NCBI GenBank assembly: GCA_051294905.1
Contig: CM119383.1
Location: 11,656,001-11,720,000, forward strand
DNA from: Botryllus schlosseri
Lineage: Eukaryota
DNA: 64,000 nucleotides
Direction of reading: 5' to 3'
In this document: positions 578 through 49,963 of the stretch, one piece after another
Position numbering within the stretch: the stretch's first letter is position 1
How the letters are laid out: each line of letters starts with the position of its first letter
Made by a program: the position numbers and the translations under genes
Notes under the pieces: model-generated
Database searches by the model: none
What the model saw: only the letters and a program-made list of their open reading frames with translations
Told to the model about the DNA's origin: nothing

Positions 578-3500
578 TCAGGCGTAATAACACGGCGATA
601 CCAATAGATCCGTGAGAATACAAAGTTGGTCATCGGTGAACTTCAACTTGTCCAGATGCCATGAATCGTGGTGCGTGCGTCGGAATTCAGAAAAGGTCTT
701 TTTGACAGTGCTCTGTAAGATTGTGTTATCGCAGCCGTTATAAAAGACTGGGAAGAGAACAGGTATCGATTTAACTTACTTCGATTGGTTGCGGGTCGTG
801 AAGATGATTGCTCAGATCCATGAGTAGATCAGGAAGATAATCCGGGATTGAGTAGGAGTTTGATAAAATGCAAGCGCTTAACGCCAATACGCCCGAGTGC
901 CGGCTGCGAAGTTCTAGTGAAAATATATCAATTTATGAGTAAAGGAATAGACTGGAAATTTGAATCCGAATTTATAATCAATAAACATATACAAAACATG
1001 ATTCGTAATACTTTTTTGATACTCTGCTTTTCCCATTTCTTGCGGCTTCTCTCTTTTCTTCTGCTTAACACGAATTTTGCGATTGCAATCGATAAACTGT
1101 GTCAAATTCTCGTCGATTTTCAAAAATCCGCACTGCAGGAGCCCGCCTAGAGTTTTTGTCGCCATTTCACGAACCTTTGAAAACGATAAAATCGAACTGA
1201 AAAACTTGGCCGAATCCATGCCCAGTCTCTAGAGGTGGTAGAAGTAAATCAGCCTTAATAGTCAAGTAGAAGTAGCAATCTACAAGACAATGTCAACGGA
1301 AGTAGAAAATGAGTGCTGCGAAAACTACTCAAGTAAGTCAACTCAGAAACTGAATTTGGAAGACGGATTGCAAAATTTTACCTGTTAATCGGAGGTGGTA
1401 TATTTTCGAAATTTCAGGATGTACCTACTACCTACAACACGAGATGACAGATGTCACTACAAATAGGCGCAATCTTCGATTATACATTCAGACTGAGATA
1501 AAGGGGCTATTTTACACGACTCTTATGACAATTTCACTGACACAAACATATCACTTTACAATTCCAAATTGTAGACAGTGAAATTGTAGAAGTGGAAGTG
1601 GGGGCAGTCTAAATAAAACCACTAAGTGAGTAGCGGAAGTAGGCAAAACTTACTCCATTACTGCATTTCTCATGAGTACAGCGATTTTTTTTACATGTCA
1701 AAAAAAGTAAAAATTTAGTAAAAATTGTAGCTTTAGGTAAAAAAAGTCAAAATTCTTTACAAAGCCAAAATTTTTTTGCAACCCCACATTTCGTTTGTAT
1801 CGTAGATTTTGCACTGTCAGTGAACTTATCATTTGACATTTTACAGCTTGTAGCCTACTTAATAGGCCTGCCGTTGTAGAAGGCCTATTCTCTGCTCATT
1901 GTGAATCATAAACATTCAAATGAAACAAATAGGTTGACAAGGTGTTATGCTCAACGTACCGCAATATCCTAACTGAAGCAAGACTTGCGTGGGTATTCCA
2001 TAGTTCTTATATCGAGAAGCACATGATGAAAAATTGTGATGTCGACACCATTGTCGGAATGAAGCAACACGGTTTGTCACCAGCAGTGTAGGCACAACTT
2101 CAGTGTTGCCAGCCAACAACTGCTGCTGTTGAACGTACTTTCTCCATTCTTGGCAAGCTACTTAGTAGGGACAGACACATTCTACCAGAGAATGTAGGGA
2201 AGTATCTTTCGTTGTACTACAAAAATTTTTGATCATTTCTACCATAATATGTGATGTAACTACTGGAATTCTTCATACGGCCAGATTTCATTTAAATGAA
2301 GTTTTTTCATGTAAAATTTGTCAGTTTTCGAGTCAAAAAAGTATTTCAGGCCAAACTACTTCGTAAGGACAGACAGTTCCAACCAGAGATGAAGATAAGT
2401 AGTACAATTCCTACATTTCGTGGGAAAACACCTAATTTGCATACGTTAGTCGGATTTTTTTAAGGTAAAAAAATGTCAAAATTTTGATTTTTTAGGTCAA
2501 AATCTTGCGTTTTTTAGGTAAAAAAAATCGCCCTACTCATGAGGAAAATCGAAGCATTGAATCTAATTCCCGCAGCCCTACCTCCAGCTGTTCATCCGCG
2601 ATCAGCTTCAAAATAACATCTCTCAAAACCGTGACGCATCGCGGGCGCTCCTTCAGAGTGAACAGGTTGTTGTAAATGAAGATTTGCAAAAATTTCAACA
2701 CTGTGTAACGCGCGTGCCACGACGACAAGCCCGAAATCTGAAGAACAAAACGACAGTGAAGGGTCTCTACACCGTCCCAGTCAAAGGAAGCGCCCCGCAA
2801 AGTACCTCCTGCACGGTTTCCATTGCAAGAACGAGTTGCTCGGGCGGGCAGTAGCTCTGCGCCAGGCACGAAAGTGATCGTTGCGTATCGTGATGAAGCT
2901 CTTCGTCCGGGCCTTGTGTGTCGACGGGAGACATCTTGAGACACAAACAACCAATGAAAATTTGCTACAGAAAACTGTGAAAGTCAAATCATTCGATTTT
3001 TCAAACGACGCACAAAGCAAATTTCCGGATGCTAAATTCACAAATACGTCTCGAGTACGAGTAGAGGTGCCCAGTAACAAAATGTTTCTACTTTTTTGAG
3101 CACTCGAGTATATTTCGACTACTTGCTCAAGTGATTGCATTTTTAGACTACTTAAGTAATTTCTACTTCTCAGAATTTACCACGTATCAAGAAGCATTAG
3201 ATTGACTTTACATCGCTGTTATCATCACTGTCGACCCTATATCGCGATAACCAGGATTATCAAATTTATATCTAGTTAGGGAGCTCTTGTCTTATCATGA
3301 ATTAGCAGCTCCTTTTGCTCTAGAGGTCATTAATACCACCACTACTCAAGCTCCTGTACTTTTGGCTGCCCTTCTGCAAAAACAGTTTCAAAAATATCAG
3401 GGTTACGACGTTCTATGTGACATTCACACCCTGCACACTAGTGACCCTGTACATTTCGCTTTTAGATTTAACCGGGCACCGTTTCCAGATAACCTTGCAT

Positions 3501-6500
3501 ATTAGAGGTAGCAGTTTCCAAACGCAAGGAATGTTGGGTTGGAAGCTGCTTCTTTGGCCGGATATGATGAACTTCATCAGCGTTTTCAACAAACGAATCG
3601 CCGAATTCCTTTCCTTATCGACCGCAGAAATGGAGTCTTCTGAATCCATGTCTTCCACATCTGAAAACAGGCAGGTTTTAGTATCCGAGTATATAAACAA
3701 AACAGAAGATGTGCCTGACCTGTCTTTGCGTTAGAATTTTGAAGCCTCTTGCTGTGGGCAGGGTTTCTTGTCGGTGCAATACCAACACTTTCATCCGACG
3801 ACATGAGTTGGTTGTTCAAGAACTCTTTCATTGCTGTTTTTTTGTCTGATAAAAAAAATACGCCATTGGCACTTGAAGTAACACCGCGAGACCAATGGCG
3901 AGAGTGTAGCTCTAAAAGGTGAAAGTGACCCGATAAATTGCGTTGAAACAGAGAAATGTGTTACGGGGTAGAAAATGTTTCGTATCATAAGTAGGGCAAG
4001 TTTTTGTTGCAGTTAAATCCGTGCAAAGTTGCATTTATTTTTGAAAAAAGTTGAAAAGTTGCAGAAGTTGCATTTTGACCACATTTTGCTCGGTTGACTA
4101 AAAATAAAAGGTCAATTTTCCGGCTCAGCTACCGAAATACCCGTAAAAGCGTTACTTCGGTGCTGATTTACGATCCGTGGAAAGTTGCATTTATTTTTGA
4201 AAAAAGTTGAAAAGTTGCAGAAGCTGCATTTTGACCTCATTTTGCTCGGTTGACTAAAAAAAAAGGTCAATTTTCCGGCTCAGCTACCGAAATACTCGTA
4301 AAAGCGTTACTTCGGTGCTGATTTACGGTGTTTCAATCGAATTTGGCGGTGTATTTCACCAAAATTGAGTTGCAAAAAGTTGCATGGAAAAAATGGACAA
4401 AAGTTGCAAAAAGTTGCACTATAAGATTCCTTCAAACAGCTTAAAACAGCATTCTACATATCTTACGAGTATTTAGGAAGCTGCCGGAAGCTGTAAAAAA
4501 AAGTTGCAAAAGTTGCAAAAACTTGCCCTAATTATAAGGTGTCAGTGTGCCAATTGTCACCGCGTCACATGACCGTGTGAGATATTAGGAGCTCAAATTT
4601 GTAGATTTTACGCGACTACTAAAAACACTGTCAATTATACACCGAATACATGATTATTGGGTATTTTTCGACCAGACCAAATATATCTAGCTTAGACACA
4701 ATGCTGAGCGTCGATCAATTCAAGTCTTCCCGGAAATGTTATTATTTCTATTGACTTGACTAGCTTCGTTCTGAATGATGTGGATGCCATGGTTTCAAGT
4801 CTTCAACGGCGGGAAAAAGTATCAAGACAACAATATCAGTGCCATACATAAAGTAATCCCCTACCATTACTCGAACCATAATATTTTGATACATACTCCT
4901 TCCGATATGACTACTTGAAACATCGAGCTCAAACATAGTTGTTACGACAGAAAAAAGGCCCGTCAATAATTCACGAAAAAATCTCGCCGCCGACGTAGCA
5001 CCGACCTTCATGGGCAAACGACGAATCCGACAGAATCTTCTGAAGACCGTGCTGTAGGTTGATCATAACATTTTGAGGTATGTCGACCTCCATCTCCAAG
5101 TCCAAGTCTTCGGCCGAAGAAAGAGACGTTAAAAGCTCATGTGACGCCCCGAAATTCGGAATCGCTAAATGTATAGCAATTTTCACCGACGGCCGATTCG
5201 ATTTCAAGGACTCGAGCACTCAAACCAGAGGTAGTCAAAATTGTCATCTTCGCTACTCATGTAGAAGTAAGAGTAACATAAATTTATACTCGAGTACAAA
5301 TAGAAGTAGTGATATCCAAGCAAGCATAAGATAAGTATTTTAGCCTCAGTTTCAGTTAAAAACTGTCAACTAGACTTAAAATAAAATTGTAACCACTTCA
5401 GTAGTTCTAGCAGGCAAAACCTACTAGGAAAAGTATGAGTACTTTCTCACTGACCACTGCAGACTCAAACTGACCTGAAGTTCCTGAAGAAGATGCTTTT
5501 GTATCTGTATCGGACTGGACCGCAACTGGAAGATTCGCTTCGACCAGCAACGGAGACAGACGTTGAAACACACGCCTTATGAACGCGTCCCGCTTCGGCG
5601 CGTAAAATCCGTGGTTTCCGAGTAGAGTGCAGTCGGGAAGGAATATAGTTGCTAGTACGCTGAAATATTATTACAGTAAAGTATGTTATTCGCCAAGCAG
5701 TATTTTCTAGTGATACACAATGAGCTAGGCACCAGGGATGACCAAGGGTTTATGCCCAACGAAAATAGTAGTTCCCTAACGTCGAATCTTTGGAATTTTC
5801 CAGAGGCTGTCAATGTATTCATCATTGCTATTCTACTTCAGTAGAAGTTTAGGTAACACGAATTACATTTCTACTCTTTTCAGCCCGATTATTCGCCGTT
5901 GACATCATATTTGGTAATACGTTTGTTGATATACAATGTCCTATCGAATTCTCCAATAAAACCTAAAGAGCCTCTTGGAGGTACAGAACTACTGTATATA
6001 ATTGAATAGTATATTCATATTGAAATAAACTCAAACATATCCAACTGACACTCGTCAAAGGTAATCGTCAGCAACTAGTAGAGAATTCAAAAGAACATCG
6101 TATCTTCACAATCGTATCACAAAATATGACGTTACCAGCATGAAATTTCGAATACGAGAGCGTTCAATGTACTATTTTTAGATGGTGCATGAACTCTTTT
6201 TGTTGACACACCCTTGGCTGGTGTATTTTGATCAAAGTCGACTCCAAGGCACATAAATGAAAGTGTGAACGGCCCCTCCCAACGACGTGAAATCTGTCGT
6301 CTCGATAATTTTTCGCACAAGCGGGATTATCCAACAAATGTTTGCCAATGGCAGAATTTGTGGCCTTTGGTTGTTCCGCATCAATCTTCAGCGGATGAAT
6401 CAAGGGTCAAGGTCCTGATCACTCCCGACGAGTGTCAGCCAAAAATATTTGGGTTCATTCCAATATGAATATACTATACCTATGACGATTGCATACATAA

Positions 6501-9500
6501 AAGTGACGCAAACTAAGTGTAAAAATCAAGTATTTTTCTGCTTGGATATACAAGTACTTCGTTACTGACCAGTGACCACCTCTGGAATCTTCACAGAAGC
6601 AATATTCTCATTAAGTCAGGTGCATAATATACAAAGTCCAGAAGTAATAGCCTATGTTACGAATATTTCATAAACATGATGGATGAATCCAATAACGATG
6701 ATAGGATGCCATCCAAAACCACAACAGCAACCAACGAACAACCAATACGGTATTCACCTTCCCAATTTATCTCGTACGATCTTATACTGGTGGTCTAATT
6801 TTGGTTCGACATCGGCCAGTATCCGATGCATCAGCTCTGCGACTCTCCATTCCTGCTGTCGAATACCGCCCTGAACAAAAACAAATGCGGAAACTGGAAA
6901 GTAGTTTTAGGATATGCTCGCATCATTTTCGTCCGTGAAATTGTCACAACAACCGAGCAAAATAGCCCCCAGTTTCACGGTAACTGAAAATAAGTCCCAA
7001 TAAATCGCCTGTTTGGGGTGCTATTAGTAGGTCTGGGCAAAATCTAGTGCCTGTGTGATTCGATTCCCGGTAGAGTAGAGCGTTAAGCTTCGGGTCAAGA
7101 CGACTATTTGTGTACCACCTATTATAACATAATAACACTAATAACGACTTGAAAAGTGCAACATGATTTCGCAACTCTGGACCATGTCATTTTCGTAGCG
7201 CTTTGCGACGATTTTGAGGGCTGATCGCTACATGACGCTAATCATTGCCCAATGAATATTTGTAGCCTCATATAACATGTTTTTGTTGTTGAATTACGGT
7301 CGAACGAGGTTTCGAGGCTCCAGCATTGGGAATTAAGCATTCACCATCTATTTCTTGTTGATAAACTGATAACACTTTTGATGTGAAGGCATCAATTACA
7401 CAAGAAACGTACCATGAGTAAATACAATCGCGCTCCATCCATATACGATCCGCCTTTTCCGTTGATCGGGTCCTTCACCAAAAATTCCAGAAACCAATGC
7501 AGCTTTCGAGGGTCGCGATTTTGCTGTGAAGAGTGTAAAGCGTCACACGATAAACAGGACATTGGAACGTGCCGTGATAACAGATGGGGTAACTACCGTG
7601 ATGTGACCGTACGCGGTGAACCAGTCCTTCTGCGTTTCGGCGCTGACGTTGTCGCGAGCCGTTTCCAGCAGAGGCAGCAGCCATTTCCACAAGGCTTCGA
7701 CCTAAACAACAAAAACGCTAGGAAAACGGGGTTTTCAAATGCGTTAGGCACATTGTCTGCTCCGGTACTTCATCATTTTTTCACTTATTATTAGGGATGG
7801 TGTGAACCTCTGAAAGGTTCAGGTTCGTGTGAACGCGAACCTTTTCAAAAGGTTCTGTGTGAACACGAACGTGAACCTCATGACATGACGTGACGTCATA
7901 TTGCTAATTCCAACCCTTTTTTTCAATGAAGTGATAGCCCATATTAATGTACACGATACTTAGCGACGACTTGGGCCACATAATGCAACAATTCTGAAGT
8001 CCATATTGGCGTTTTAAACGTCGCTAAATGTATCAACTGAGGCAATCGAAGGATATAATACTCCCATAAAATCAATATCTTTCGTCGCTTTGCCAACAAT
8101 TTCGACGAGGACTTACCAGGGAATATACGCTTATCCCTCATCGGCAGGCCGTGTTATTTTTGGCATATGCCAAAACTGCCAAAAATAACTTATTTTTGGC
8201 ATTTTTCGATTTTTATTTTTGGCAGTTTTGGCATCGTCCTCTAAATAGATAGTTTTAGCCTCGAATTAGTCACAAAAACGCTTTATTTGGGCTAGTTTGT
8301 CAAAAGACACCACAAAATGTGCAGCATCCACGTATAATCAGTGCCAACAAACAATAATAAGAAGAAAAAACCTAACGATTTCATAGGTTAATAATACCAA
8401 ACGAAACCACAAAATGTGCAGTAGCCTATCCATCGGAATCGGTGCCAATAAGCAAAAAAATAAAGAAAAGCCTAACAAACACGCTCAACAGCTGATTGTT
8501 ACGGAGCTTCAAAATCTTTGAAGGGCCGAACCGGCTTCCATTCATCATGAAAAGAGATCACTTCGCCAGTGCCATCGATCTCATCGCGGAAAGAATTTTC
8601 TTCCTGATCCTTTTCCAGGAGTTTCCTGTGTTGTCTCTCAACACATTCTATTTAGTAGCCCGACTATCATTTGTCCTTCAGTCTACCGATATATTTTCGG
8701 ATGACTTTTGTCACTTCAAGTGGCTTTAATATTACCAACTCGCATGGAAGAGTCCTGGGAAGGTTAGCTTGTTTAAAAACATTGACGCAACAAGACTGTC
8801 TGGCAAAACGAGACTATCCAGCTCAGAAATAGCCAGACAGTTTGTTGCGTCACAATGTTCAACTCGATCACAATGCACAAATCGTGGTTGATTTGGGGGG
8901 TTCCAGTTCCATGAGCAGAATATAATTTATCTTTCAATAATCAGTATACTGCGGCAGCTTCTCATTGATACCCGTATTATCAAATTTAGCGCTCAACAAG
9001 CCGGTCCAAAATGGTCGTAAAATTGCCTTTGGACAAATGGAAAGTATGACGTAAACCAAATGCAGTCAGCCGTTCAATTTCACTGTGCTTTCACCCCTAA
9101 TGGGTGGGCTGGACCCAGATTAAGAAACCTGCCTTTCACAAACGCTCTTCTTGCTTGTAACGCAGTCCTGTTAACACAACACCATGAAAGAAATACACTA
9201 TTTGGCAGGCTGTGTTATTTTTGGCATATGCCAAAAATTGCTTATTTTTGGCATTTTCAAATTTTTATTTTTGGCAGTTTTGGCATCTGGCACCTGAAAT
9301 GCCAAAAATAACACGGCCTGCTCATCGGTCTAGGCCAGACCGGACAATGATTTCGGTGTCTGAATATTGTTACGTTGATATTGAGCAGAGTGTAAAATGG
9401 GTTTCTATACTTACTACCGATATTACCTCATTAAGAAGTTATGCAACAGTAGCCAACTCCACAATCGCACAGATTTGGTTTTAATGATGCAGTAAAGATA

Positions 9501-12500
9501 TGAAGTCAAGATTGACCCCGTACGCCTTCTCGAATATTTTACATCAGTAAACGATATCAATCTTATTGATTGGTTGAATAAGCATCCTTCGCTGACCACG
9601 TATTTCGCTTGTGATGTTGTGTGATTGCGGGTCAAGCTCACAGCAGAGAGTCACTAAATATTCACAAACGGAAAACTGGATAACTCGAGCAAACTTTTGT
9701 AACAAAGCAAGTAAAAATTTTGAGATTGTCAAGGTGCATGCTCATTTAGTGTTGATTTTTAATGCTGCCAACGCCATGCATAGAGTGGCCCGCAGTTGAA
9801 ATGCAATAAATTTAACCAATGATGTTATAATGAAGTGAAAATTGCAATATATGAAAAAGGTTCACAGTGCAGAACCTACCAAGGTTCTGTTGTGAACGCG
9901 AACCTCTAAATTTCCGAGGTTCACACACAGAACGCGAACGTGAACCTCACGTTCACACCATCCCTACTTATTATTGCGGAGGGACGCAAATATTTGATCG
10001 ACCGATGTCACAGACACCTTTGTACATCCTAGACCTCCACTACGAAAGAACACAGACGTGGGGGTTGAAACTCGCCTTTTCGAAAGTCCAATGCTTGGAG
10101 CCGATGACCAAGCCGGACACAAATTCTGCGACGCATCTCTGCGAGCTTTCTTGCGGGTCTTTCGCGAGCTCTACTATTTCGCTTTGAAACAGCGGCAAAA
10201 TGGAGTCGCCAAAATTCCGGAACACGCCCTGAAAGAACAAGGAATTCAGATTTCGTCTCGGTATCGATGTGGAATATTCCACACGTAACGTTCATTGCTG
10301 ATGCACTGCACTTCGCCCGATGACGGCATCCCACTTGAAATTGAAATAAATTACATTGAAACAAAATAACAGAGTACATAATATAATTATATTTGTGATT
10401 GGTAAAAATTGAGAAGACTTGCAACAGCTTTCCGAGGCATTAAATGATAGTTTAAAAAGTAGTCACCGCTATTGCCATAAATTAATAACACATAACCATG
10501 AATAAGATTCGATGGCGGCTACCTAATGATAGGATAGGGTGTGGTTTTCAAATGTTTTTGTTAGTCAGTTCGGTGATTGTAATGAGGTGATTCTCAAAGA
10601 TGCAGCAAATAATGGAATTGCGATATGGTTATAATCAAGTGGCAGTGCAAGGCATAAGCAATACCCGGTAATATGGAACACTGTCAGTGCCAAGTCTGCT
10701 AATATGCAGTGTTGGGATGACTCGAGTCAACTTTTTCGTATGACTTGACTTGACTCGAGTCACTCTGCCAAAATGACTTGACTTGACTCGGCGCTTCAGA
10801 CATGTGGATTGACTCGTGACTCGGAGCAAAATTCACGAGTCAATTTCAAGTCATCAAGTAAACTGGCTCGATTAAATATCGGTGTCTGGTGTATGTTCGG
10901 ATTGTTCGCGATACGCCGATGCCACTTGCGAGAATAACCATTCATTCACTGATTGTACGTTTCAATGATCCTCCATTGTTACATCACAAATAAATTGACC
11001 GCAAACGAAATGATCATAGCTTACGGTGTAGTAGTAGTAGATTAATCTAATTCTAGTAGCAACGCATCTCTGTTTCTTAGACGGCTCAGTGCTTACATTG
11101 CGCAGCGCTCACCTGTACCAACCCTATTGTATGATTTAAATCGAATGAATATAGTTTATGCGTTTATAATCTCACGGATGTGTAGATGGATGGGTTGTGT
11201 ATTGTACGATATCAATTTGTTTCAATTTCCCGAGGCTTCGAATTCGATCTTCAATTTTGGATGAGAATAACAGACTGTAGCATGGAGCTATACAGTTACT
11301 CACATATTTTATTACCAGTTCTACGTATGCGTGAGTGACACAACACCTCTTTACATGTATTCAACTTTATATTCGTTATTTCATTCAGGATAAATGGCCA
11401 ATTAATCTGTACTTCACGCAGCGAGCAAAACTTTGAATCATCACTCAAGCTTCAAAAATTCAATTTGACTTGAACTGTGACTTGACTCGTGACTTGACTT
11501 GACTCGACTTGACTCGAGTCACCTCCAAATAACGGGTGACTTGACTTGACTCGAGTCACCTTCCAAAATCGATTGACTTGACTCGAGTCAAAATGTGCAA
11601 TGACTCGAGATGACTCGTGACTCAAAGGTAGTGACTTGATCCCAACACTGCTAATATGTATTATAAATTTGACATTGTGAGAGTCAAATGCATTTGCGCT
11701 AGGGCTATTGAAGTATGATGCTTTGCAGTACCTTGAATAACTCAACTCTCTTGGCGTCGTACTTGTCGCGACCTTTGATATTTTCCAACGCGTGATACTT
11801 TAACAAGAGTTTCACAAACGACGGGTCCATGAATTTGTTGAATATCTCTTTTTCCCCCTTAACAAGATATAGCCCCTATATTAAATGTACATACGCATCC
11901 AGACATCGACCTACGTCAGGCATTTCTTCAATCGTCCTATCCAACTTGTAGCTGCCGTCGTACAAAGCGTACGTCTTCAGCTGGGACGGCCATTGGTAAT
12001 ACGACCAATGGGTTTTCTCGATGAAAATTGTCGAGTCGTACTTTTCGGCTGACGTCGGCAGATTTGCAGAGTCGTACTGCATGATTTTGTTGTCGGGACG
12101 GTCGCCGGGAAGGACTTCGTCTCTGTTAACCGGGATTCCGCCTAGGATAAGCAAATTTCAATACGAGTTGTGCAAATTTAACTCATGCAAGTCCCATATA
12201 CAGCTAACCTAAAAGAGTTGTTTTGCAATTTACTGAAGCCAATCCAAGTTTCGCAAATACAATAATTTCAGGGTGGTTTCAATACTGTTTCCCCATTGTT
12301 GGAGCCGCGAAACCTCAGCTAGCAGCAGTTCAGCATCAAAAAACATGCTGTACGTGGCTATACTAATATTTATGGAACGACATTTCTGCCAAGTAGTACT
12401 CAAATCAACCCTGACAATGCTCATAAAGCGCTACTAAATAGTCATAGCACAGACAAACAAAATTATTTTGGCCGTGTAACTGCCATCATTTTGAACATTT

Positions 12501-15500
12501 CAAGTCACCAGGTTATTATTTCTATGACATCATGATAGGTGGTACTGGAATGCCAGGGTTGTACCCGAGTCAAGTCGAGTCATTTTCAATTCCCTACAAG
12601 TCAAGTCCGAATCCAAGTCAGCGATCAGAGGGTCGAGTCCGAGTCCAAGTCATTGTGCTGACTGCTTATCTTTCAGTTTAAGCCTTTTAACCCACTTTTC
12701 ATTGCTTTGTTTGGTGATATCGAATGGTTCGCATTTATAATACTCTGATTTTCCTCACTTTTAGCAGTTTCTGGTCGCATTTTCAAGTACCAGTACCAAT
12801 AGACGAAATCCGAATAGTGTTGTAACTTAACTATTCTTCAAAATTACAATGAAATGTCGGTCTTGGCCGTCTGAGTCTCGAGTCATATGACTTGGTTCGA
12901 GTCATGCGCAATGACTCGAGTCCAAGTCGAGTCATGACTCGAGTCATTACAGCCTTAAAGGGGCATTGCGCTCAAAAAATGATGCGGTCTCAAATTGAAG
13001 GGCAAAACGAAAGAAAATTTTTGGCTTCAGCTGTTTTCTTCAGAACGCCACCGTAATGGAGCAGCAATTTATTGAAATTTCCAGAAACACATCCGGCTGC
13101 AGCTGTCGCGGCTCCGGGTCATTTCTTAACCCGTTACATGGCACGATGACTTCATCGGCGCACTTGCTCGGCACGATTAGGTAGTCACGCAGAGGACGAA
13201 CTTTAGATAGTTGTCAGTCGATGTTATGAAGGAATCATGTGTTGCACACCAAGGCGACGCTCAACGTACGGTGTTAAGTCAGGAGGATTTGTGTCTGGAG
13301 CTTGTCATGACTCTATAGTATTTGCCAGTTGACTGATACTGAGATGCCATTACAGTTGTATATTGATGCAAAGCTATATTGATACAGCTGTCATTTTCAA
13401 GATGAATTAATGACTGCACAGTGCACAACCTTAGGAGTAGTGGTCTTGCGGAAGAGACAGACACAGGATATTTTGCATCATTTACCCATGGCATTTCAAC
13501 TATCTTGATACGGTCCAGTTTACTTGTTCAAGACACAGATGTGTAGATAGTCAACACGAAAATATCACTATTTCATTCCCATCAAAGTTCCAATATTGTT
13601 GTGGAAATTTTTATCGTAACATTGTTGTTCTCAGTTTCACAAACGAATCTTCTGTCTCCGTCAGTTCATTCATGCAATTCCTTTGACACGTAGATAACGT
13701 AAAATTTGTTAAAATTATTAATGGTATGGAAGAAGATCTTGATGTTGAATTAACTTCAGATGAAGATACAGATGTAGAAGATTTTGATGATATCACGGTA
13801 TTTGGTGAGAGCCTGCCGTATCAATTCGAGCCACAATATTCAGAGGAGGAATTCGCCCCTCTTGTTGCAACTCTGGAAGCACAAACTCATGTCTCTGTAA
13901 GTATTGTACCTGTGTTGCTTGAATGCAATTTATCAATCTCATTGTATTGGTCAAAGGAATCGTCAGAAAACCAGAGTCAACTTCGGACACTTGACAATGA
14001 ATGGTGTAGTTGCTTGAACTGTGCATGCATGCCGAGCCAGAATGATCGCGTCTGCTGCTGGGAAATACAACAAATAATGGAGCTTCTGGGAATGGAGGGT
14101 CGACTTGCATAACAGAACATGACGATTTTATCCTACATATACAACCTTCCATTCTTGAAACATATTTCAAAGTGAACAGAAAAAACTGGAATAATAACAA
14201 TCAACCACATGGTCCACATGGTCCTTGCCAGCCTGCATTGTGACTGCTATAAGGCAAAAGTACCCTAGTGATGATGGACTGTGATTGATAACACTGCAGC
14301 TCTGCATATAAGTCTAAAGCAGTTCAGTTGCTGTATAAGACAGTGACCTGGAACTGTTTGCATTCTATATTCCACCAATGGCTGCTGTGCCTGATACATC
14401 ACTACTTTGCTTACTCGTTATTTATTAAAGATTGTGCATTTTTAATAAATAATAGGAATATATAGCCAGGGTATTACAACGGGGCAGTCAGGCAGTGGAA
14501 GAATTAAATTGGGCTAGTAAGCTACGCAGCACTGCACATGTCATACAACTCGAAGATGTGCAATAAGAGATGTATTGATATCTCAGTATCGTTCTAGAAT
14601 GACGTTTTGAAAGTAATTCCTCTTTGGGGGGGGGGGGGGGGGCTGGTTCTGGTGCAATGCAGACTGGATGCACACTTCTTGAAATGTTACTGGGGAAGTT
14701 GATGCCTGTGCGATTCTCAGTAATTCGCCTTAAAAAGCTCTTTCACATAGTGGTTCGTTGTCTTTTCATACACATTTTTCAAGATCCCCTCTTTTGCTGA
14801 CAGAGAGTAACTTTTTTTGTATCGTAGAACACCTGCTTAAACAAATATAGAGTAACTAAATACCTTGACTTGCAAACCGTCACACAGGTTGAAAAGCACT
14901 TTATGCTGTAGTCGTTTTTCGGGATAACAGTAATTTCTTATCCACAACACGATTACCACCAGTCAGGGTTCCCCATGAACATGACAAAATTCATGACATT
15001 CAAAATTGGTGTAGGATTCGGGTACTGTAGGAAAATTCATCATCCCTAACAAAAATCCAACGGTACGCAAACCTAACCTGAACCCACGACTCCGCAGCTG
15101 ACCCTAAAACATATATATTCATTATATTGTAATCTTACTATTTCCCAAGCCATAATTTTACGATACCCTCGAACCCTCATCCTATGATTTTCCAACCTGA
15201 ATGCGAAACCAATTATGACCGCTCTGAATTTTGAAATGTTCAGAGGGCACACTGATTGGTGATGGTAATGTTTTAAACATAACATAAGAATAGGACAAGA
15301 TCTATTACTGCCCTCAAGAAATAGAATACACTAGGCCCGATTAAGAGAAAAATCTCCTGACTGAACATCGTCCGTGGAACGCCGTATCTACACAACCTTG
15401 GCGTGTAAGACATATTTGCTTCATAACATCGTGTGACAACTATCTGAGGTTCGTCCTCTGCGTGACTGCCTAATCGCGCCGAGCAAGTGCGACGATAAAG

Positions 15501-18500
15501 TCATCGTGCCATGTAACGGGTTAAGAAATGACCCGGAGCCGCGACAGCTGCAGCCGGATGTGTTTCTGGAAATTTCAATAAATTGCTGCTCCATTACGGT
15601 GGCGTTCTGAAGAAAACAGCTGAAGCCAAAAATTTTCTTTCGTTTTGCCCTTCAATTTGAGACCACGTCATTTTTTGAGTGCAGTGCCCCTTTAATACTC
15701 AACTCGGAATCGAATTGCCCCGACACTCGATTTTGACCAGCCCTATGGCAACACAATCTAACCAGATTATCGGTCAAACGTCATAACAAGAATGTAAAAC
15801 ATCGCGAACTGCTCCACAACTCAACTTCGGAACAACACTTGTCTCACACCCAATTGCATTACAAGTGCCTTACTTATTTCCTCCGGCGATTTGTAGACAA
15901 TTTTCCGTTTCCTCTCCTGCTTTTTCAGTATGCTCGTAACGGGACAGATGCACAACTGACGGAATAGCAGCGTGTCGTCGACCAGACCAGCGGTAACGAA
16001 TCGGGTTACCCTGCTGGGTAGCGGGACGTCCCAGCGAATGATGAAATTGATGCAGGCCACGCCGAAATTTCGCTGGATCCAAGATCTGAATATGAAAAAG
16101 CATTAGCAACGTTCCTGTGTGACCAGCGAATGTAGAACAAATGCAGGATAAATGTGAGAGGACAGTAGGTGCCAAGTCTAATGTAGGGTTATTGTGAGAG
16201 AATACCATCGACATTGGTGTTGAACAGGTATTAGTATATCATATTGAAATGAACCCGAATATTTTCGGCTAACACTCGTCAGCGATATAATCGTCAGCAA
16301 AAATAGTAGAGAATCGGAAGAGACGTTGTTCGGCATCCTCGACTAGTTCTGACAATCACCCCTGACGTGTGTCAGCCGTAAATATTCGGGTTTATCTCAA
16401 TACGAATATGATATTCAAATGTATATTGAAGTTCCGTAGTACCTCCAAGAAGTTGTAAATTGGTGTTACTTTGGAAACCGATTGAGCACACCCGGATACC
16501 ACGTTGATCTTAAAATCTCGAGAAACCTGTGATGTTTTATTTGTCGAAATTTTTGTTATCGACTTAGGCCACTTCACTTACGAGTATCTTTAGGATAGGT
16601 TTACGTCATTTTTAGAGTGAAATTGTCATGACAACTGGCCAAAAGAGCCTCTGTATCACGGTTACTATAATATTTCCCAAAAATTTCACCATTTGTGGTG
16701 TCGATCAGGTCTTTGGAGCCAGAGCAGGAGCAAGGAGCCGAGCCCCGGTGCCGTGCATTTTCAGCGGAGCCGGTTGTTTGAACGGCAGCTCCGGCTCCGC
16801 TGTATTTCATAAGATGCTTGTGTTTGTGCTAATGGTTGAATTCACATAATTGTACGATAACCGTTCACAAGATCAAGAACTGCGGCCTCGTCGGCACCAC
16901 ATTTTCCAACTTACCAGTAACCATGTTCATACATAGGCACCAAACCTGGGTAAGCTGGATTTGCCGCGCTCACTCGATCCGTAATTATATAATTATGGGT
17001 ATACCCGCAATTTTGTTTTCAGCACAACACCGATTGCCAATTGTGTTGTTCGAAAAATAATGAAAACCATGCATGTCAAAAAACGGGATTGATGCTTATG
17101 TGAGCTGAGCAATTTACCTAATTGATAATGAGACGAATATATAAGCGACGCCAGAGAATAAAAACGTGAACTTGCTACACAATTCGATTTGGCGGCGCGC
17201 ATTCCGCACACTTAGAAACATCGTCTCAATTCTGAATTGGATGAGCAAATGCACTACCTTGGTTGATAGTTTTTTAATCATAGCGCCAAATTAGACAATG
17301 TGTTATCGTTTATGCCTGTGAATTGAAATTCATTCCAGCGCATGATCGCTATTGATTGTGTCCGAACCCTGCCCTGGTGTTGAATATCAGAGGGCAATTA
17401 GTGATTGGATGATCTTTCCAATTGGTAAACATCAGTTTTGTGTATTGCTTCTTGTCGACTTGATCACTCGTATTCTTGAATTGAATATCACTTGCGAGCT
17501 TGTATTTTAATTGGTTACTGACTTGTACAGTGTACATCGTTGATGGAACACCAGATTATCAGTGGCACTAATTCTGAGTTTATCGAATTCGTTTAAAAGG
17601 GAACCTACATTCCACTAAACTTGATCGACGACGGACGAACTGGTAACGAGCGCACCATTATCGAATTTCAAACCATTGGGTATATTTGGTAAAAAGTGAA
17701 TTTCTGCAAATAAGGTCGCGACGTGCGCTCATTTCTGCAGAGCATAGGCGCTGAACTCTAATCTTCTCTAGGTATGCGAGATCGATGACGTCACAAAGGG
17801 ATGACGCCATAGTGCGCCAGAATTGGCAAATAAGCCGACTCGCAAGCGTTCAATATCACCTGGCACTTGTATATGGTGACAAAAATACGATATGATTAAG
17901 CAGGCCGCGTAGCCAGCCGGCCGCTTGCTGAATTGATTGAATCCATTTCAAATTTACCAAGGTAGCATCAGTTTATTATGGTTAAGAACATGCACCAATG
18001 CCGATAATACATCGATCGGATCAGCATCCTTGTGTAATATACTCGACGCATCACGCTACCATAAGATTACCAACGCATGCGGCTGTGTAGTCAATTAGCG
18101 AGCTCGCAATCTCCGCAACATATTCGCCAACACACGCGCCGACAATCGGGAGATTTCAATCACTCCGCCTCGAGAACAAACGAATACGCATCTTCGGCGA
18201 CGGCTAATAAGGTTGCAGGAATTATTTTCCCAAATAGAAAGTCTGTTCTGGACTTTATTCATTAGTGACTTTGATTTCATAGGAGTTGGAAGTTTCAATA
18301 TCAAGAGCCTGCAAGACATTTTCTGAACGTTCTGTTTTAGTATTAGCGTTAGTCAAAATCAATTACGCCGCTGTCTGTTCACGGTCAGTATGTATTTCAA
18401 TCAATTCCGTCCATGTTCATTGTTCAATGTCTGAGCCAGTCTGACATCACAATCACAGAATAAGCGATAGTTCCGGCCGGCGCATAAGATATCATGTTCC

Positions 18501-21500: not shown

Positions 21501-24500
21501 AATTCTGAGTAAAATGCCAAGCTTCGAGTCAAGTCGATTATTCGAGTACCAAATATCATAACAGTAGTACTAATGACTCAATTATTTCTATGAATATTTG
21601 TAGATTTGTGTAACATATTTATCGATGTTGACTGTTGATGTTGAGTTATGGCCAACCAAGGTTTCGAAACTCCAGCAGTGCAAATAAAGTAGTGAAACAA
21701 TAATTTCTGACAATAAAATGATATTCTTGGCGCAGATTCGCAGATGCGCAGATCCTAGCAATCGAATCCTGGAGCCTAGCCCTACAAATTACAAAGTGCG
21801 TCAATTCAAAGAAGTGTAAAAAAGTTTGAAACCTCGGAGAGGAATGAAGATATCATGCAAATTAAAACGCCCGACGCCATACTCACTACGCGCCGTGGAG
21901 ACCAGATATAATTAGCAAAGAGGATAGGCCAATCATCCACTGACCTCCTAACATGAGATGAAAGGCCCCCTTCATGAGCTTGTGGTCTTCGACTGGGTCT
22001 TTCGTGAGCGCCTCGAGGACCAGCGGCAGGAAGTGTTCCTCGGACTTGTAAGGCGTGCCTTTGAGAGCGCGGAAGAACGCGCGCTGAGCCTGAATCCTCA
22101 CCTGCGGAATAGGATCGAAATTGAAATGTGATGCTTTTCATCACGTCCGCGATCATGCACATACAGTGCTTGTATCGGACTGTATAAATAATATTGAATT
22201 TCAATTTCAGGTGACCCAGGCTTGCTTGCAAACAGGACTTCACCTCAAGGCAGCATCACCTGTAGAAACCACACATTCGATTTTGACAAAATCTCACCGC
22301 GCTGTAATGCGACATGGACAGCTTCACCAAGTCCATCATACCGTCGTGATTGATCTGCCTGTATTCCTTACGGCGATTCGCAAAAGTGCGCAACTGATGC
22401 TGAAGAACCACCCTGTTAATGACGAGCAGGCGCTGGTGCTTTTTTCCGCCGCGCATCTGCAGACAGGCAGAAATAATTGATAGAAATGACGAGCTGAAAA
22501 CAGGTACGCGCGTACCAGGTCTCGCATCGCGCGTTTCCCGTTCATGTAAATCTGCCAATGCTTGTCGAATTCGGCCCGGCTGGAGTCCTGAATGGACAGG
22601 CAATCGCAGTAGATCGTGATGATCATGGATATGGACTGAAAAAAGAAAGTGGATAGATAGGCCTAACTAGTGAACACAGTATGAATTAGTATTCCTGCAG
22701 GTATCATCCAGAGGTGACCACAAGCGGAGTGTCAAGAACTAAATTAAGATATATGAAGCATTGCAGATTTACGTTAGTCTGATATTACTGAAAGGTGCAC
22801 TGTTAAAGCCACGGTTGTAACCAAGTCACAAGGTTCAGAGTCGTAAGTCAATCTCACTTTTATAGTTTTGACTCTAGTCAAGTCGAGACAATTGCAATTC
22901 ACCACTGGGCAAAGTCCGAGTCCAAGTCAGCTAGTAGAGGGTAGAGTCCGATTTATCGTGTTTTGACTCGAGTCCAAGTCATTATGTTTTCTGTTCAGTT
23001 TTCAGTTCAATCCAGTTCAACCAACTTTTTTCCACTATGCTCGAGTGATATAGAATGGCTTGCGTTCATAATATTGCAACTTTGCTCAGTCTTAGCCGTT
23101 TTTGGCCCTAATTACCGGGTATCGGGACTGATAGACGCCATATCAATAATGTGGTGACTTTACTATTCTCCGGATTTACAATGACACGTCTGTCTTGGCC
23201 GTCTTAGTCTCGAGGCATATGACTTGGTTCGAGTCATTCATAATGACTCGAGTACAAGTAGAGTCGAAACTAAAATTGACTCGAGTCGAGTCATTTTTCG
23301 CATTTGAAGAAATGGCTTGAGTCAAGTCGAGTCATCAAAAAATTGCGACTTGGTTCACTTACCTTGACGTCATCTTCTTTCGTATCCATGATCTTCCACA
23401 AGGCGGCCCGCACTGTTTCGAATATGTCTTGCCTCAATCCACGCGTCGTTTCACTCCGTTCTTCCACTACTTTTTCATATTGCGTCAAATACGACAGAGT
23501 CTTGACCTGCCACGTGGTGAGATTGCTAACATTCTTTCTGCCCCTGAAACCAAACACACATTCCTTAGAGGTTTCCGGAAAATTTCAGGATTTACAGTGA
23601 ATCACTACAACACTGGAGCATGTAATGAACAGGGGTATCCACTAAAAAGAAGGTAATCGTTTTCAGGACAATAAAATAGGATTTTGAAGATGTCAAGTAA
23701 CATGCCACTGTCTTGCATCGAAATTTCGACAATTTAGGAATTTAATAAAAATTGAGACCGCTGATGTTTTGTACAATGAATAGTAGCAGAGGACTAAGAT
23801 TGCTGTGCTGCTAAGCAGGGTTGTAACCAAGTCGCAAGGCTCCGAGTCACAAGTCAATCTCACTTTTATAGTGTTGACTCGATTCAAGTCGAGTCATTTT
23901 CAATTCACTACCGAGTCAAGTCCAAGTCATGGTATTATGACTCGAGTACGAGTCCAAGTCATTGTGTTGACTGTTCAATTTCCAGTTAAAGCCTTGTTAA
24001 ATCCACTTTTTATTACTGTTTGGTGATATCGAATGGTTCGCATTTCTATTATACAAATTTCCTCACCTTTCAAGTCGAGTCGAGTCGAGTCATTATAACC
24101 TTGATGCTAAGATGGCATACTTTTGCACAATGAGGAATGTGTATAGCCCAATGCAATTGATGTCCCATTGTACTAGCGAGACCAATGAATTACGGCCATC
24201 ATGCATCTACTAAGTGTAATATTTCCAATTGCATAAATTTCATCAAATAAATTTCAAAAGCTCTAAAACTCTATAAAAACCAAAGTTTTGATTTGGACTC
24301 CTTCCCAGTCTGTATAAGCAACCTCCACCCTTCATACGTACGGTAACAATAACTCACTTTATCTCAACTGGTTCGTCATCGGCCAGAGGTATGAGCTGGC
24401 CCGCGCCAACCATAAGTTCATTGACGATAGTCAGACTCCTCAACAATTCGTCCTTTGTCAAATCCTGAAGAAAATAGGAGATTTTGCATTATGATGTCAA

Positions 24501-38789: not shown

Positions 38790-39374
38790 CAGGGTTGTAA
38801 CAAAGTCACAAGGCTCCGAGTCACAAGTCAATCTCACTTTTATATTTTTGACTCGAGTCAAGTCGAGTCATTTTCAATTCCCACCGAGTCAAGTCCGAGT
38901 CCAAGTCAGCGAACAGAGGATCGAGTCCGAGTCATGGTATTATGACTCGAGTCCGAGTCCAAGTCATTGTGTTGACTGCTCAGTTTCCAGTTAAAGTCTT
39001 CCTAAACCCACTTTTTTAACTCTGTTGGGTGATATTGATCGAATGGTTCACATTTATAATATACCAATTTCCCTCACTTTTAGCAGTTTCAGGTCGCATT
39101 TTCAAGCATCAGTACCAACAAACGAAATCCCAACAGTGTGTTGGCTTCGAAATTACAATGAAATGTCGGTCTGAACTGTCTGAATCTCGAGTCAATGACT
39201 TGCTTCGAGTCATACGCAATGACTCGAGTCCAAGTCGAGTCAATACACAGATTGACTCGAGTCGAGTCGAGTCATTTCCGTTTGAGAAAATGACACGAGT
39301 CGAGTCGAGTCATCTGAAAACCGTGACTCGAGTCTGACTCGAGTCGAGTCATGACTCGAGTCATTACAAACCTG
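38790..39374. mobile_element. GACTCGAGTC-family MITE, full length (585 bp)
   Basis: cagggttgtaac ... cattacaaacctg. Perfect TSD gtttctta (38782-38789 and 39375-39382). Confidence 0.9.
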
Positions 39375-49401: not shown

Positions 49402-49963
49402 CAGGGTTGTAATGACTCGAGTCATGACTCGACTCGAGTCACGATTTTCGGATGACTCGACTCGAGTCATTTTCTCAAAATACGGAAATGACTCGACTCG
49501 ACTCGAGTCAATCTGTGTATTGACTCGACTTGGACTCGAGTCATTGCGCATGACTCGAAGCAAGTCATTGACTCGAGTTTCAGACGGCCAAGACCGACAT
49601 TTCATTGTAATTTCGAAGCCAATACACTATTAGGATTTCGTTTGTTGGTACTGGTGCTTGAAAATGCGACCAGAAACTGCTAAAAGTGAGGAAAATGGAT
49701 ATAATATAAATGCGAACCATTCAATATCATCAAACAGGGTTAAAAAAGTGGGTTTAGAAAGACTTTAACTGGAAAATTAGCAAACAACACAATGACTTGG
49801 ACTCGAGTCATTATACCATGACTCGGACTCGATCCTCTGTTCGCTGACTTGGACTCGGACTTAACTCGGTGGGAATTGAAAATGACTCGAGTTGACTCGA
49901 GTCAAAAATATAAAAGTGAGATTGACTTGTGACTCGGAGCCTTGTGACTTGGTTACAACCCTG
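49402..49963. mobile_element. GACTCGAGTC-family MITE, full length (562 bp)
   Basis: Perfect TIR cagggttgta / tacaaccctg. Perfect TSD ctaagatg (49394-49401 and 49964-49971). Confidence 0.93.

What the first reader, a model, noticed from the sequence alone, without database searches (positions are those of the whole stretch)
12959..15691. Kolobok-type transposon carrying a P2X7-ballast-like (KolX) gene inside a PSME4 intron
Seen: TTAA on both flanks, AG...CT termini, unusually long inverted arms (about 270 bp strong, about 330 bp with indels), and two convergent coding remnants. The plus-strand remnant has WCxCxxC...CC.E...CIT.H..F...[14 protein letters not shown]. The same order of motifs occurs in the C-terminal ballast of vertebrate P2X7 (recalled WCQCGSC...CC...CITT..F...LPSCCRWRIRKEFP). 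Established: Kolobok elements duplicate TTAA and encode a transposase plus KolX, which is homologous to the zinc- and guanosine-nucleotide-binding P2X7 ballast. Inference: a mobile reservoir of this domain in a probable invertebrate chordate bears on how jawed-vertebrate P2X7 acquired its tail. The very long TIRs may define a distinct subfamily.
Basis: partly seen in the sequence, partly recalled or inferred. Interest (0 to 1): 0.7.

Follow-up and report, generated by a model that had tools for sequence, protein, structure and literature searches.

The report
Dead Kolobok transposon carrying KolX relic
A 2.7-kb dead jumping gene of the Kolobok type sits in an intron of a sea squirt's PSME4 gene and carries a broken copy of KolX, the accessory gene whose relatives gave vertebrate P2X7 receptors their tail. 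That link was published in 2022, so this is a new lineage record, not a new kind of thing.

Summary
The element is real. It has TTAA on both flanks, AGGGG...CCCCT termini and 300-nt arms that are 94% complementary. It lies in an intron of PSME4, which runs on the minus strand.

The plus strand carries a spliced KolX/P2X7-ballast-like gene that is dead. It has a one-base loss, a 9-nt duplication and a deletion of at least about 330 nt. Pfam P2RX7_C is the only family hit by two separate pieces, in the right order, but both hits fall below Pfam's cut-off. A better-preserved copy (P0001) and a bridging protein (P0003) strengthen the link.

I found no transposase and no second, convergent coding remnant. 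Stop-free stretches in the 3' half are at chance level.

Contig depth suggests tens of KolX-bearing copies and roughly 2,000-3,000 short derivatives sharing the arms. RNA reads come from other copies and look spliced. TTAA plus the terminal AGGRR motif plus KolX is the published signature of Kolobok (T2/Kol0).

This is a new member of a known kind; the P2X7-tail idea is already in print (Kojima and Bao 2022). First readers of this scan noted three other Kolobok/KolX elements elsewhere in this genome; these are unchecked.

The parts
12955..12958 (.). Left TTAA (target-site duplication)
   Evidence: Sequence. In a contig of run X5, a family left end abuts a TTAA that belongs to an interrupted arm, so the TTAA comes from the target (joint 15520 to 12955).
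12959..13254 (+). Left terminal inverted repeat. It begins AGGGGCATTGCG, and weaker pairing continues to about 13296.
   Evidence: Contig depth is about 500-2,000 times that of the single-copy flank.
13297..13725 (+). Upstream non-coding region of the KolX gene
   Evidence: From 13552 onward it aligns with the independent copy L001 (about 94% identity by my count of the mismatches shown).
13726..13896 (+). KolX exon 1 (57 codons, contains [14 protein letters not shown])
   Evidence: 86% identical to P0001. The same motif occurs in P0002 and P0003.
13897..13956 (+). Intron 1 (GT..AG, 60 nt, no stop codon, so gene callers read through it)
   Evidence: Sequence. RNA depth is 0 at 13917, against 79 at 13875 and 22 at 14027, while DNA contigs span the intron.
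13957..14087 (+). KolX exon 2, first part, in the frame of the ATG ([10 protein letters not shown]...VCCWE)
   Evidence: Pfam P2RX7_C, profile positions 65-100, E 0.07. P0001 gives E 3.7e-4 over the same part.
14088..14224 (+). KolX exon 2, second part, shifted by one base ([10 protein letters not shown]...[14 protein letters not shown]). The G run at 14088-14090 is one base shorter than in L001. There is a 9-nt tandem duplication at 14205-14222.
   Evidence: Alignment with L001. Other copies and RNA reads carry one extra base at 14086/14087.
14225..14284 (+). Tail of the last exon in a third frame ([19 protein letters not shown], stop at 14282-14284). It is joined directly to exon 2 by a deletion of at least about 330 nt. 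The deletion removed the end of exon 2, intron 2 and the start of exon 3.
   Evidence: L001 diverges here and continues into an intron and an exon reading YIAWSYRHIGYW. Pfam P2RX7_C, profile positions 169-186, E 0.024.
14285..15343 (.). Non-coding 3' interior. It holds AATAAA at 14445-14450, a G17 run at 14626-14642, and an internal inverted repeat at 14946-15023 / 15195-15272.
   Evidence: no family hit of weight; ORF lengths at chance level. Contigs of other copies span 14875-15338.
15396..15691 (-). Right terminal inverted repeat. Its reverse complement begins AGGGGCACTGCA, and weaker pairing starts at about 15344.
   Evidence: Depth is about 800-2,900 times that of the single-copy flank.
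15692..15695 (.). Right TTAA (target-site duplication)
   Evidence: Sequence.

Best explanation
This is one decayed, non-autonomous copy of a Kolobok-superfamily (T2/Kol0-type) cut-and-paste DNA transposon. A Kolobok DDE transposase supplied by another element would have bound the long inverted arms and inserted the element at a TTAA in a PSME4 intron, duplicating the TTAA; this step is inferred. Besides its arms, the copy carries the lineage's accessory gene KolX, a small intron-containing gene for a zinc-cysteine 'ballast' domain like the C-terminal tail of P2X7. Here that gene is a pseudogene, which is shown. The copy has no transposase and is not detectably transcribed. Other copies of the family are transcribed and spliced. 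The arms alone have multiplied into a large family of short derivatives. What KolX does for the transposon is unknown. The most likely role, by inference only, is a zinc- and perhaps guanine-nucleotide-binding accessory or regulatory factor of transposition.
For: Structure:
- 300-nt arms, 94% complementary, flanked by TTAA, with termini AGGGG...CCCCT.

Published diagnostics:
- Kolobok makes TTAA duplications and has 5'-RR...YY-3' termini, unlike piggyBac. Its Kol0 lineage encodes KolX, which resembles the P2X7 ballast (PMC9587614).
- Xenopus T2-MITE/Kolobok elements share a TTAA target and a terminal AGGRR motif. One full-length family begins AGGGGAAC (PMC6004289).

KolX:
- Two separate pieces hit only Pfam P2RX7_C, in the right order: profile positions 65-100 and 169-186.
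- The better-preserved copy P0001 hits the same family at E 3.7e-4.
- P0003 matches the window piece at E 5e-4 against 1.8 billion proteins, and at E 2e-12 in a pairwise comparison. P0003 itself passes the P2RX7_C cut-off.
- The tail [10 protein letters not shown] keeps the P-x-C-x5-R spacing that I derive from human P570, C572 and R578, residues listed as conserved in PMC7016195.

Family:
- Interior depth is about 6-60 times that of the single-copy flanks, and the arms about 500-2,900 times, in two samples.
- Contigs join arm to arm (13231>15318, 13234>15443, 13472>15404).
- One contig shows a family end inserted at a TTAA inside another copy's arm.
- RNA reads carry other copies' letters and skip intron 1 (all).
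Against: - There is no transposase or fragment of one in the copy, and I could not retrieve an autonomous partner.
- The window's own Pfam hits (13.5 and 15 bits) and P0001's (about 21 bits) are below the 23.5-bit cut-off. An unrelated chance hit at E 0.0012 appeared in the same kind of scan.
- Direct sequence and small-profile searches of solved structures did not reach P2X7.
- I saw no empty site for this insertion, and TTAA is palindromic, so at this locus alone it could be read as part of the arms.
- The depth sums of contigs are only a rough proxy for copy number.
Confidence: 0.8

Rival explanations
1. A non-autonomous TTAA-targeting element with long arms, of unresolved superfamily, picked up a host ballast-domain (ZCD) gene by DNA-level capture. 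On this reading KolX is cargo, not a native gene of the element.
For: - The gene keeps its introns.
- No transposase is present.
- An earlier, unchecked note of this scan describes another long-armed TTAA element in this genome carrying an unrelated gene relic.
- Stand-alone ZCD genes exist in many animals (PMC7016195).
Against: - TTAA plus AGGRR termini plus KolX together are exactly the published Kol0/T2 signature.
- The KolX region is present in tens of copies and in an independent environmental contig with the same upstream sequence. This fits a native component of the family.
Confidence: 0.1
2. A piggyBac-superfamily non-autonomous element. piggyBac also targets TTAA, and a few piggyBac families encode a KolX-C-like protein.
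For: TTAA flanks. [quoted passage not shown]
Against: - The termini are AG...CT, which the same paper gives as the feature separating Kolobok from piggyBac.
- Those piggyBac proteins lack most of the seven conserved cysteines. This remnant keeps WCxCxxC, CC, C-I-T-x-H and LPxC.
- No piggyBac transposase domain was hit.
Confidence: 0.05
3. Not a mobile element: a local inverted duplication that happens to be bounded by TTAA.
For: There is only one copy in the 64-kb window.
Against: - The arms and the interior are multi-copy in two samples.
- Deletion derivatives and a nested insertion exist.
- An independent copy occurs in an environmental contig.
Confidence: 0.01

Closest known systems
Kol0 lineage of Kolobok (for example Kolobok-1_XT), which encodes a transposase plus KolX (Kojima and Bao 2022, PMC9587614)
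   Same: TTAA duplication, RR...YY termini, and an accessory gene similar to the P2X7 cytoplasmic ballast with its cysteine cluster.
   Different: This copy has no transposase, and its KolX is broken. Tunicates are not among the hosts that paper lists for Kol0 (vertebrates, annelids, cnidarians, sponges). The arms are 300 nt long. The KolX sequence is divergent and scores below Pfam's cut-off.
Xenopus T2-MITE / XKol elements (Hikosaka et al. 2018, PMC6004289)
   Same: TTAA target and the terminal AGGRR motif; one frog family starts AGGGGAAC, and this element starts AGGGGCAT. Short non-autonomous derivatives are abundant alongside rarer long copies.
   Different: The host is different, and there is no sequence similarity beyond the terminal motif. 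The frog paper's main text does not mention KolX.
P2X7 cytoplasmic ballast / ZCD proteins, including zebrafish nanor (PTHR36981; Rump et al. 2020, PMC7016195)
   Same: The order of motifs, the cysteine cluster, and the P-x-C-x5-R spacing that I derive from that paper's residue numbers for the last conserved block.
   Different: It sits inside a transposon instead of being a host gene. The A549-W559-equivalent block is deleted in this copy and seen only in L001. Direct sequence searches did not reach solved P2X7 structures.
piggyBac families encoding a KolX-C-like protein (mentioned in PMC9587614)
   Same: TTAA target and a ballast-related open reading frame.
   Different: Termini are AG...CT. 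The cysteine cluster is retained here, whereas those proteins lack most of it.

Membership tests
Kolobok superfamily | [quoted passage not shown] | tested here: met
   TTAA lies on both flanks. A second junction in run X5 has a family end abutting a TTAA that belongs to the interrupted arm. I did not see an empty site for this locus.
Kolobok superfamily | Termini 5'-RR...YY-3' (T2-type AGGRR) | tested here: met
   AGGGG at both ends. The criterion comes from PMC9587614 and PMC6004289.
Kolobok superfamily | DDD/E transposase with THAP and H2CH motifs | tested here: inconclusive
   It is absent from this copy: no Pfam hit on any frame, and ORF lengths are at chance level. The family's autonomous partner could not be fetched, because no tool here searches this genome as a whole.
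Kol0 lineage | Second gene, KolX, similar to the P2X7 ballast with its conserved cysteines | tested here: met
   - Collinear hits to P2RX7_C only (E 0.07 and 0.024).
- P0001 at E 3.7e-4, and P0003 above the cut-off.
- P0003 links to the window piece at E 5e-4 database-wide.
- The motifs WCxCxxC, CC, CITxH and LPxC are present.

Caveat: the window's own hits are below the curated cut-off, and the gene is broken.
Kol0 lineage | Transposase falls within the Kol0 clade | not testable with these tools
   No transposase sequence of this family was available.
piggyBac superfamily | Termini of the CCY...RGG type (from my own knowledge) and a piggyBac DDD transposase | tested here: not met
   The termini are AGGGG...CCCCT. 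No transposase domain was hit. PMC9587614 uses the termini to separate the two superfamilies.
P2RX7_C / ZCD domain (PF20478, PTHR36981) | Score above Pfam's gathering threshold | tested here: not met
   Window pieces score 13.5 and 15 bits and P0001 scores 19.9-20.9 bits, against a cut-off of 23.5. The pieces could only be searched separately.
P2RX7_C / ZCD domain (PF20478, PTHR36981) | Conserved P570, C572 and R578 block, and A549/Y550/W559 block | tested here: inconclusive
   The first block is kept with the spacing I derive from the human residue numbers ([10 protein letters not shown]). The second block is deleted in the window and only loosely recognisable in L001 (YIAWSYRHIGYW).

The most novel reading that the evidence does not exclude
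The family may still be alive or partly domesticated in sea squirts. Spliced KolX transcripts come from other copies, and the 300-nt arms have multiplied into a few thousand short derivatives. That would make this a long-armed Kol0 sub-lineage in the sister group of vertebrates. It would be the closest invertebrate material for testing what KolX does and how a P2X4-like gene captured it.
Probability: 0.3. Interest if true: 0.4.

Novelty: new member of a known kind. Interest (0 to 1): 0.25.

Why it matters
It adds tunicates to the hosts of KolX-bearing Kolobok elements. Neither paper I could read on the ballast domain or on KolX mentions tunicates. It also shows that the family is abundant and transcribed there. 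This is useful for annotating the genome, and it gives anyone studying KolX function or the origin of the P2X7 tail another lineage to work with. It does not change the published picture, and this particular copy is dead.

Tried and rejected
- **Word-index protein searches.** The window piece, P0001 and P0003 gave nothing or only self-hits. I could not build a deeper ballast profile or a phylogeny with nanor and P2X7.
- **Solved structures.** Sequence and small-profile searches never reached P2X7; they returned only chance hits.
- **Structure prediction.** An AlphaFold model of the natural exon-2 stretch of P0001 came out at mean pLDDT 48, so I ran no fold search.
- **Other copies.** An exact-pattern scan of JGI metagenomes for the arm found nothing. 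Look-ups of the two small ORFs inside the arms found no record. There is no other copy in the window. Findings look-ups by sequence were blank, as the operators had warned.
- **Paralogous empty site.** I looked for one in other copies of the abundant repeat on the left flank. That repeat ends two or three bases before the TTAA, so none exists.
- **L002.** This locus holds P0003 but is a repeat-dense region with no clear element boundaries, so I dropped it.
- **Gemini_mov hit.** The hit on 14292-14462 (E 0.0012, below cut-off) is a hydrophobic chance match.
Full report
**What is in the sequence**

The element runs from 12959 to 15691. TTAA lies directly outside each end (12955-12958 and 15692-15695). 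The ends read AGGGGCATTGCG... and ...TGCAGTGCCCCT.

The repeat finder gives arms at 12955-13254 and 15396-15695. They are 300 nt long and 94% complementary, with 2,141 nt between them.
- A direct comparison shows 18 mismatches in 296 nt and a 167-nt perfect block at 12986-13152.
- Weaker pairing continues to about 340 nt across an 11-nt indel.
- The four mismatches in the outermost 27 nt are all transitions at CpG or TpG positions (my reading).

**Setting**

Three minus-strand stretches hit PSME4-specific Pfam families:
- 10043-10291 matches HEAT_PSME4 profile positions 152-211.
- 11879-12157 matches HEAT_PSME4 profile positions 53-105.
- 25173-25499 matches HEAT_PSME4_mid.

The element therefore lies in a PSME4 intron, upstream of the exon that ends near 12157. 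Its KolX gene is antisense to the host gene.

On the left, the element sits two or three bases beyond the end of a very abundant dispersed repeat. The right flank is single-copy.

**The plus-strand gene**

- An ATG at 13726 opens exon 1 (57 codons, with [14 protein letters not shown]).
- A 60-nt GT..AG intron occupies 13897-13956.
- Exon 2 then reads ...[28 protein letters not shown]....
- The reading frame breaks in the G run at 14088-14090.
- It continues in a second frame as [39 protein letters not shown].
- It breaks again near 14225 and ends in a third frame as [19 protein letters not shown], with the stop at 14282.

The exhaustive protein search found P0001, 86% identical at E 1.4e-61. 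P0001 is encoded on L001, a 1,019-nt environmental contig. L001 is a second copy of the same family, about 94% identical to 13552-14217 by my count of the mismatches in the alignment. Comparison with L001 shows four differences in the window copy:
- It lacks one G in that run.
- It has a 9-nt tandem duplication at 14205-14222.
- It has lost three bases near 13994, in frame.
- It has lost at least about 330 nt. In L001 those bases hold the end of exon 2 (GRRLSNK), a second intron and the start of a third exon reading YIAWSYRHIGYW.

P0001 is itself not pristine: one cysteine of the cluster has become tyrosine. I could not settle the splice phase of its second intron.

**Is it a ballast/KolX domain?**

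The pieces were searched separately.
- The first piece hits only Pfam P2RX7_C (profile positions 65-100, E 0.07).
- The last piece hits only the same family (profile positions 169-186, E 0.024).
- The middle piece hits nothing.

Each hit alone is weak and below the 23.5-bit cut-off. A chance hit at E 0.0012 to an unrelated family turned up in a similar scan. What carries weight is that two independent pieces pick the same one of 24,736 families, in the correct order. Three further results add to this:
- P0001 hits P2RX7_C at E 3.7e-4 to 7.7e-4.
- P0003 is one of only two other proteins that match the window piece at E below 0.001 among 1.8 billion (E 5.2e-4, 30% identity; pairwise E 2e-12). 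P0003 itself passes the P2RX7_C cut-off at 23.7 bits.
- The tail [10 protein letters not shown] keeps proline, cysteine and arginine at the spacing that I derive from human P570, C572 and R578. Rump et al. list these residues as conserved across animals (PMC7016195).

I rate the homology as very likely but not formally above threshold. Direct searches of solved structures did not reach P2X7. A predicted model of the exon-2 stretch was too poor to use.

**No second gene**

Nothing on the minus strand, or anywhere in 14285-15395, hits a Pfam family at a level worth noting. The longest stop-free stretch there, 85 codons, is reached by 35% of shuffles. The 135-codon minus-strand ORF over 13796-14200 is the antisense of the KolX coding region. 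The copy has no transposase and is non-autonomous.

**The family**

I laid contigs of two samples of the same species, and of one run labelled as another organism, on 11700-17200.
- Single-copy flanks have a summed depth of about 16-22 in X1 and about 128 in X5.
- The interior (13356-14827) reaches 122-1,179 in X1 and 1,559-7,722 in X5, roughly 6 to 60 times the flanks.
- The outer arms reach 41,708 and 58,129 in X1, roughly 2,000-2,900 times the flanks.
- The inner arms reach roughly 500-800 times the flanks.

The tool warns that these sums are not copy numbers, so I take them only as 'tens' and 'a few thousand'.

Contigs join the left arm straight to the right arm (13231>15318, 13232>15449, 13234>15443, 13472>15404). 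This is what internal-deletion derivatives made almost only of arms would give.

One X5 contig runs from 15520 to 12955 with four shared letters. In it, a family left end AGGGG follows the TTAA that belongs to the inner part of another copy's arm. That is a second insertion at a TTAA, and there the TTAA clearly comes from the target.

Run X12 is labelled organism B, but it matches a 321-nt single-copy flank without a mismatch. It is therefore not independent evidence from a distant species.

**Expression**

Raw RNA reads (X23, unstranded, about 6% of the run read) cover 13724-14275 at about 14-29 per orientation.
- Almost all carry letters that differ from this copy; at 13875, for example, 32 of 32 and 47 of 47 reads do. 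They come from other copies.
- Depth is 0 at 13917 inside intron 1, although DNA contigs span the intron. This fits splicing.
- 30 of about 86 reads carry the extra base at 14086/14087.
- Reads piling on the G17 run at 14626-14642 trail off in poly-G and look like a sequencing artefact.

**Comparison with what is known**

- Kojima and Bao (PMC9587614) state that Kolobok makes TTAA duplications and has 5'-RR...YY-3' termini, unlike piggyBac. They state that the Kol0 lineage encodes KolX, which resembles P2X7 residues 476-595, the ballast with seven conserved cysteines around two zinc ions. They also conclude that P2X7 arose by fusion of a P2X4-like gene with a KolX gene, and that nanor is a domesticated KolX.
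- Hikosaka et al. (PMC6004289) define frog T2-MITE/Kolobok elements by the TTAA target and a terminal AGGRR motif. They list a full-length family that begins AGGGGAAC.
- The element here begins AGGGG at both ends, so three independent hallmarks agree.
- Neither paper, nor Rump et al., mentions tunicates. Full-text searches for Kolobok with tunicate or Ciona gave no description of such elements.
- First readers of this scan flagged three other Kolobok/KolX elements on other pieces of this genome, and a TTAA-flanked element with a THAP gene. These notes are unchecked and I could not read their sequences.

**Verdict**

The interpretation as a Kolobok-type element with a KolX relic in a PSME4 intron is the best reading, at about 0.8. 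It is short of proof because no transposase is on hand. It is a new member of a known kind.

Noticed in passing
window 12563-12952: This is a very abundant dispersed repeat, rich in the palindrome GACTCGAGTC. Its summed contig depth is roughly 12,000-22,000 times that of the single-copy flank. At least seven other copies, 72-81% identical, lie in this window, for example at 22876-23265, 38851-39242 and 49521-49902. It ends ...CATTACA, two or three bases before the element's TTAA.
   Followed up: partly
window 16116-16299: This is a second very abundant repeat, about 10,000 times the single-copy depth, with sharp boundaries at 16239 and 16282 in many contigs and RNA reads.
   Followed up: no
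window 12206-12341: A single-copy contig of another sample (X5) skips these 136 bases. This looks like an insertion/deletion polymorphism in the PSME4 intron.
   Followed up: no
window 15692: A single-copy contig of sample X5 aligns from exactly 15692 onward, and its first 30 letters do not match the element's arm. This may be an allele without the insertion. The one reads call allowed did not show those letters.
   Followed up: no
window 14946-15023 and 15195-15272: This is an internal inverted repeat inside the element (78 nt, 72% complementary). The bins that overlap its two arms have higher contig depth than the bin between them and than the KolX region, so this part may also circulate on its own.
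   Followed up: no
window 14626-14642: A run of 17 G attracts 320 RNA reads that trail off in poly-G. This is most likely a sequencing artefact, not expression.
   Followed up: partly
L002:10001-10408: P0003 is a ballast-like protein that passes the P2RX7_C cut-off. It lies in a repeat-dense stretch of a 1.46-Mb contig of an unnamed eukaryote. A DDE_1 (pogo-like) transposase gene sits 3 kb away, but there are no clear element boundaries.
   Followed up: partly
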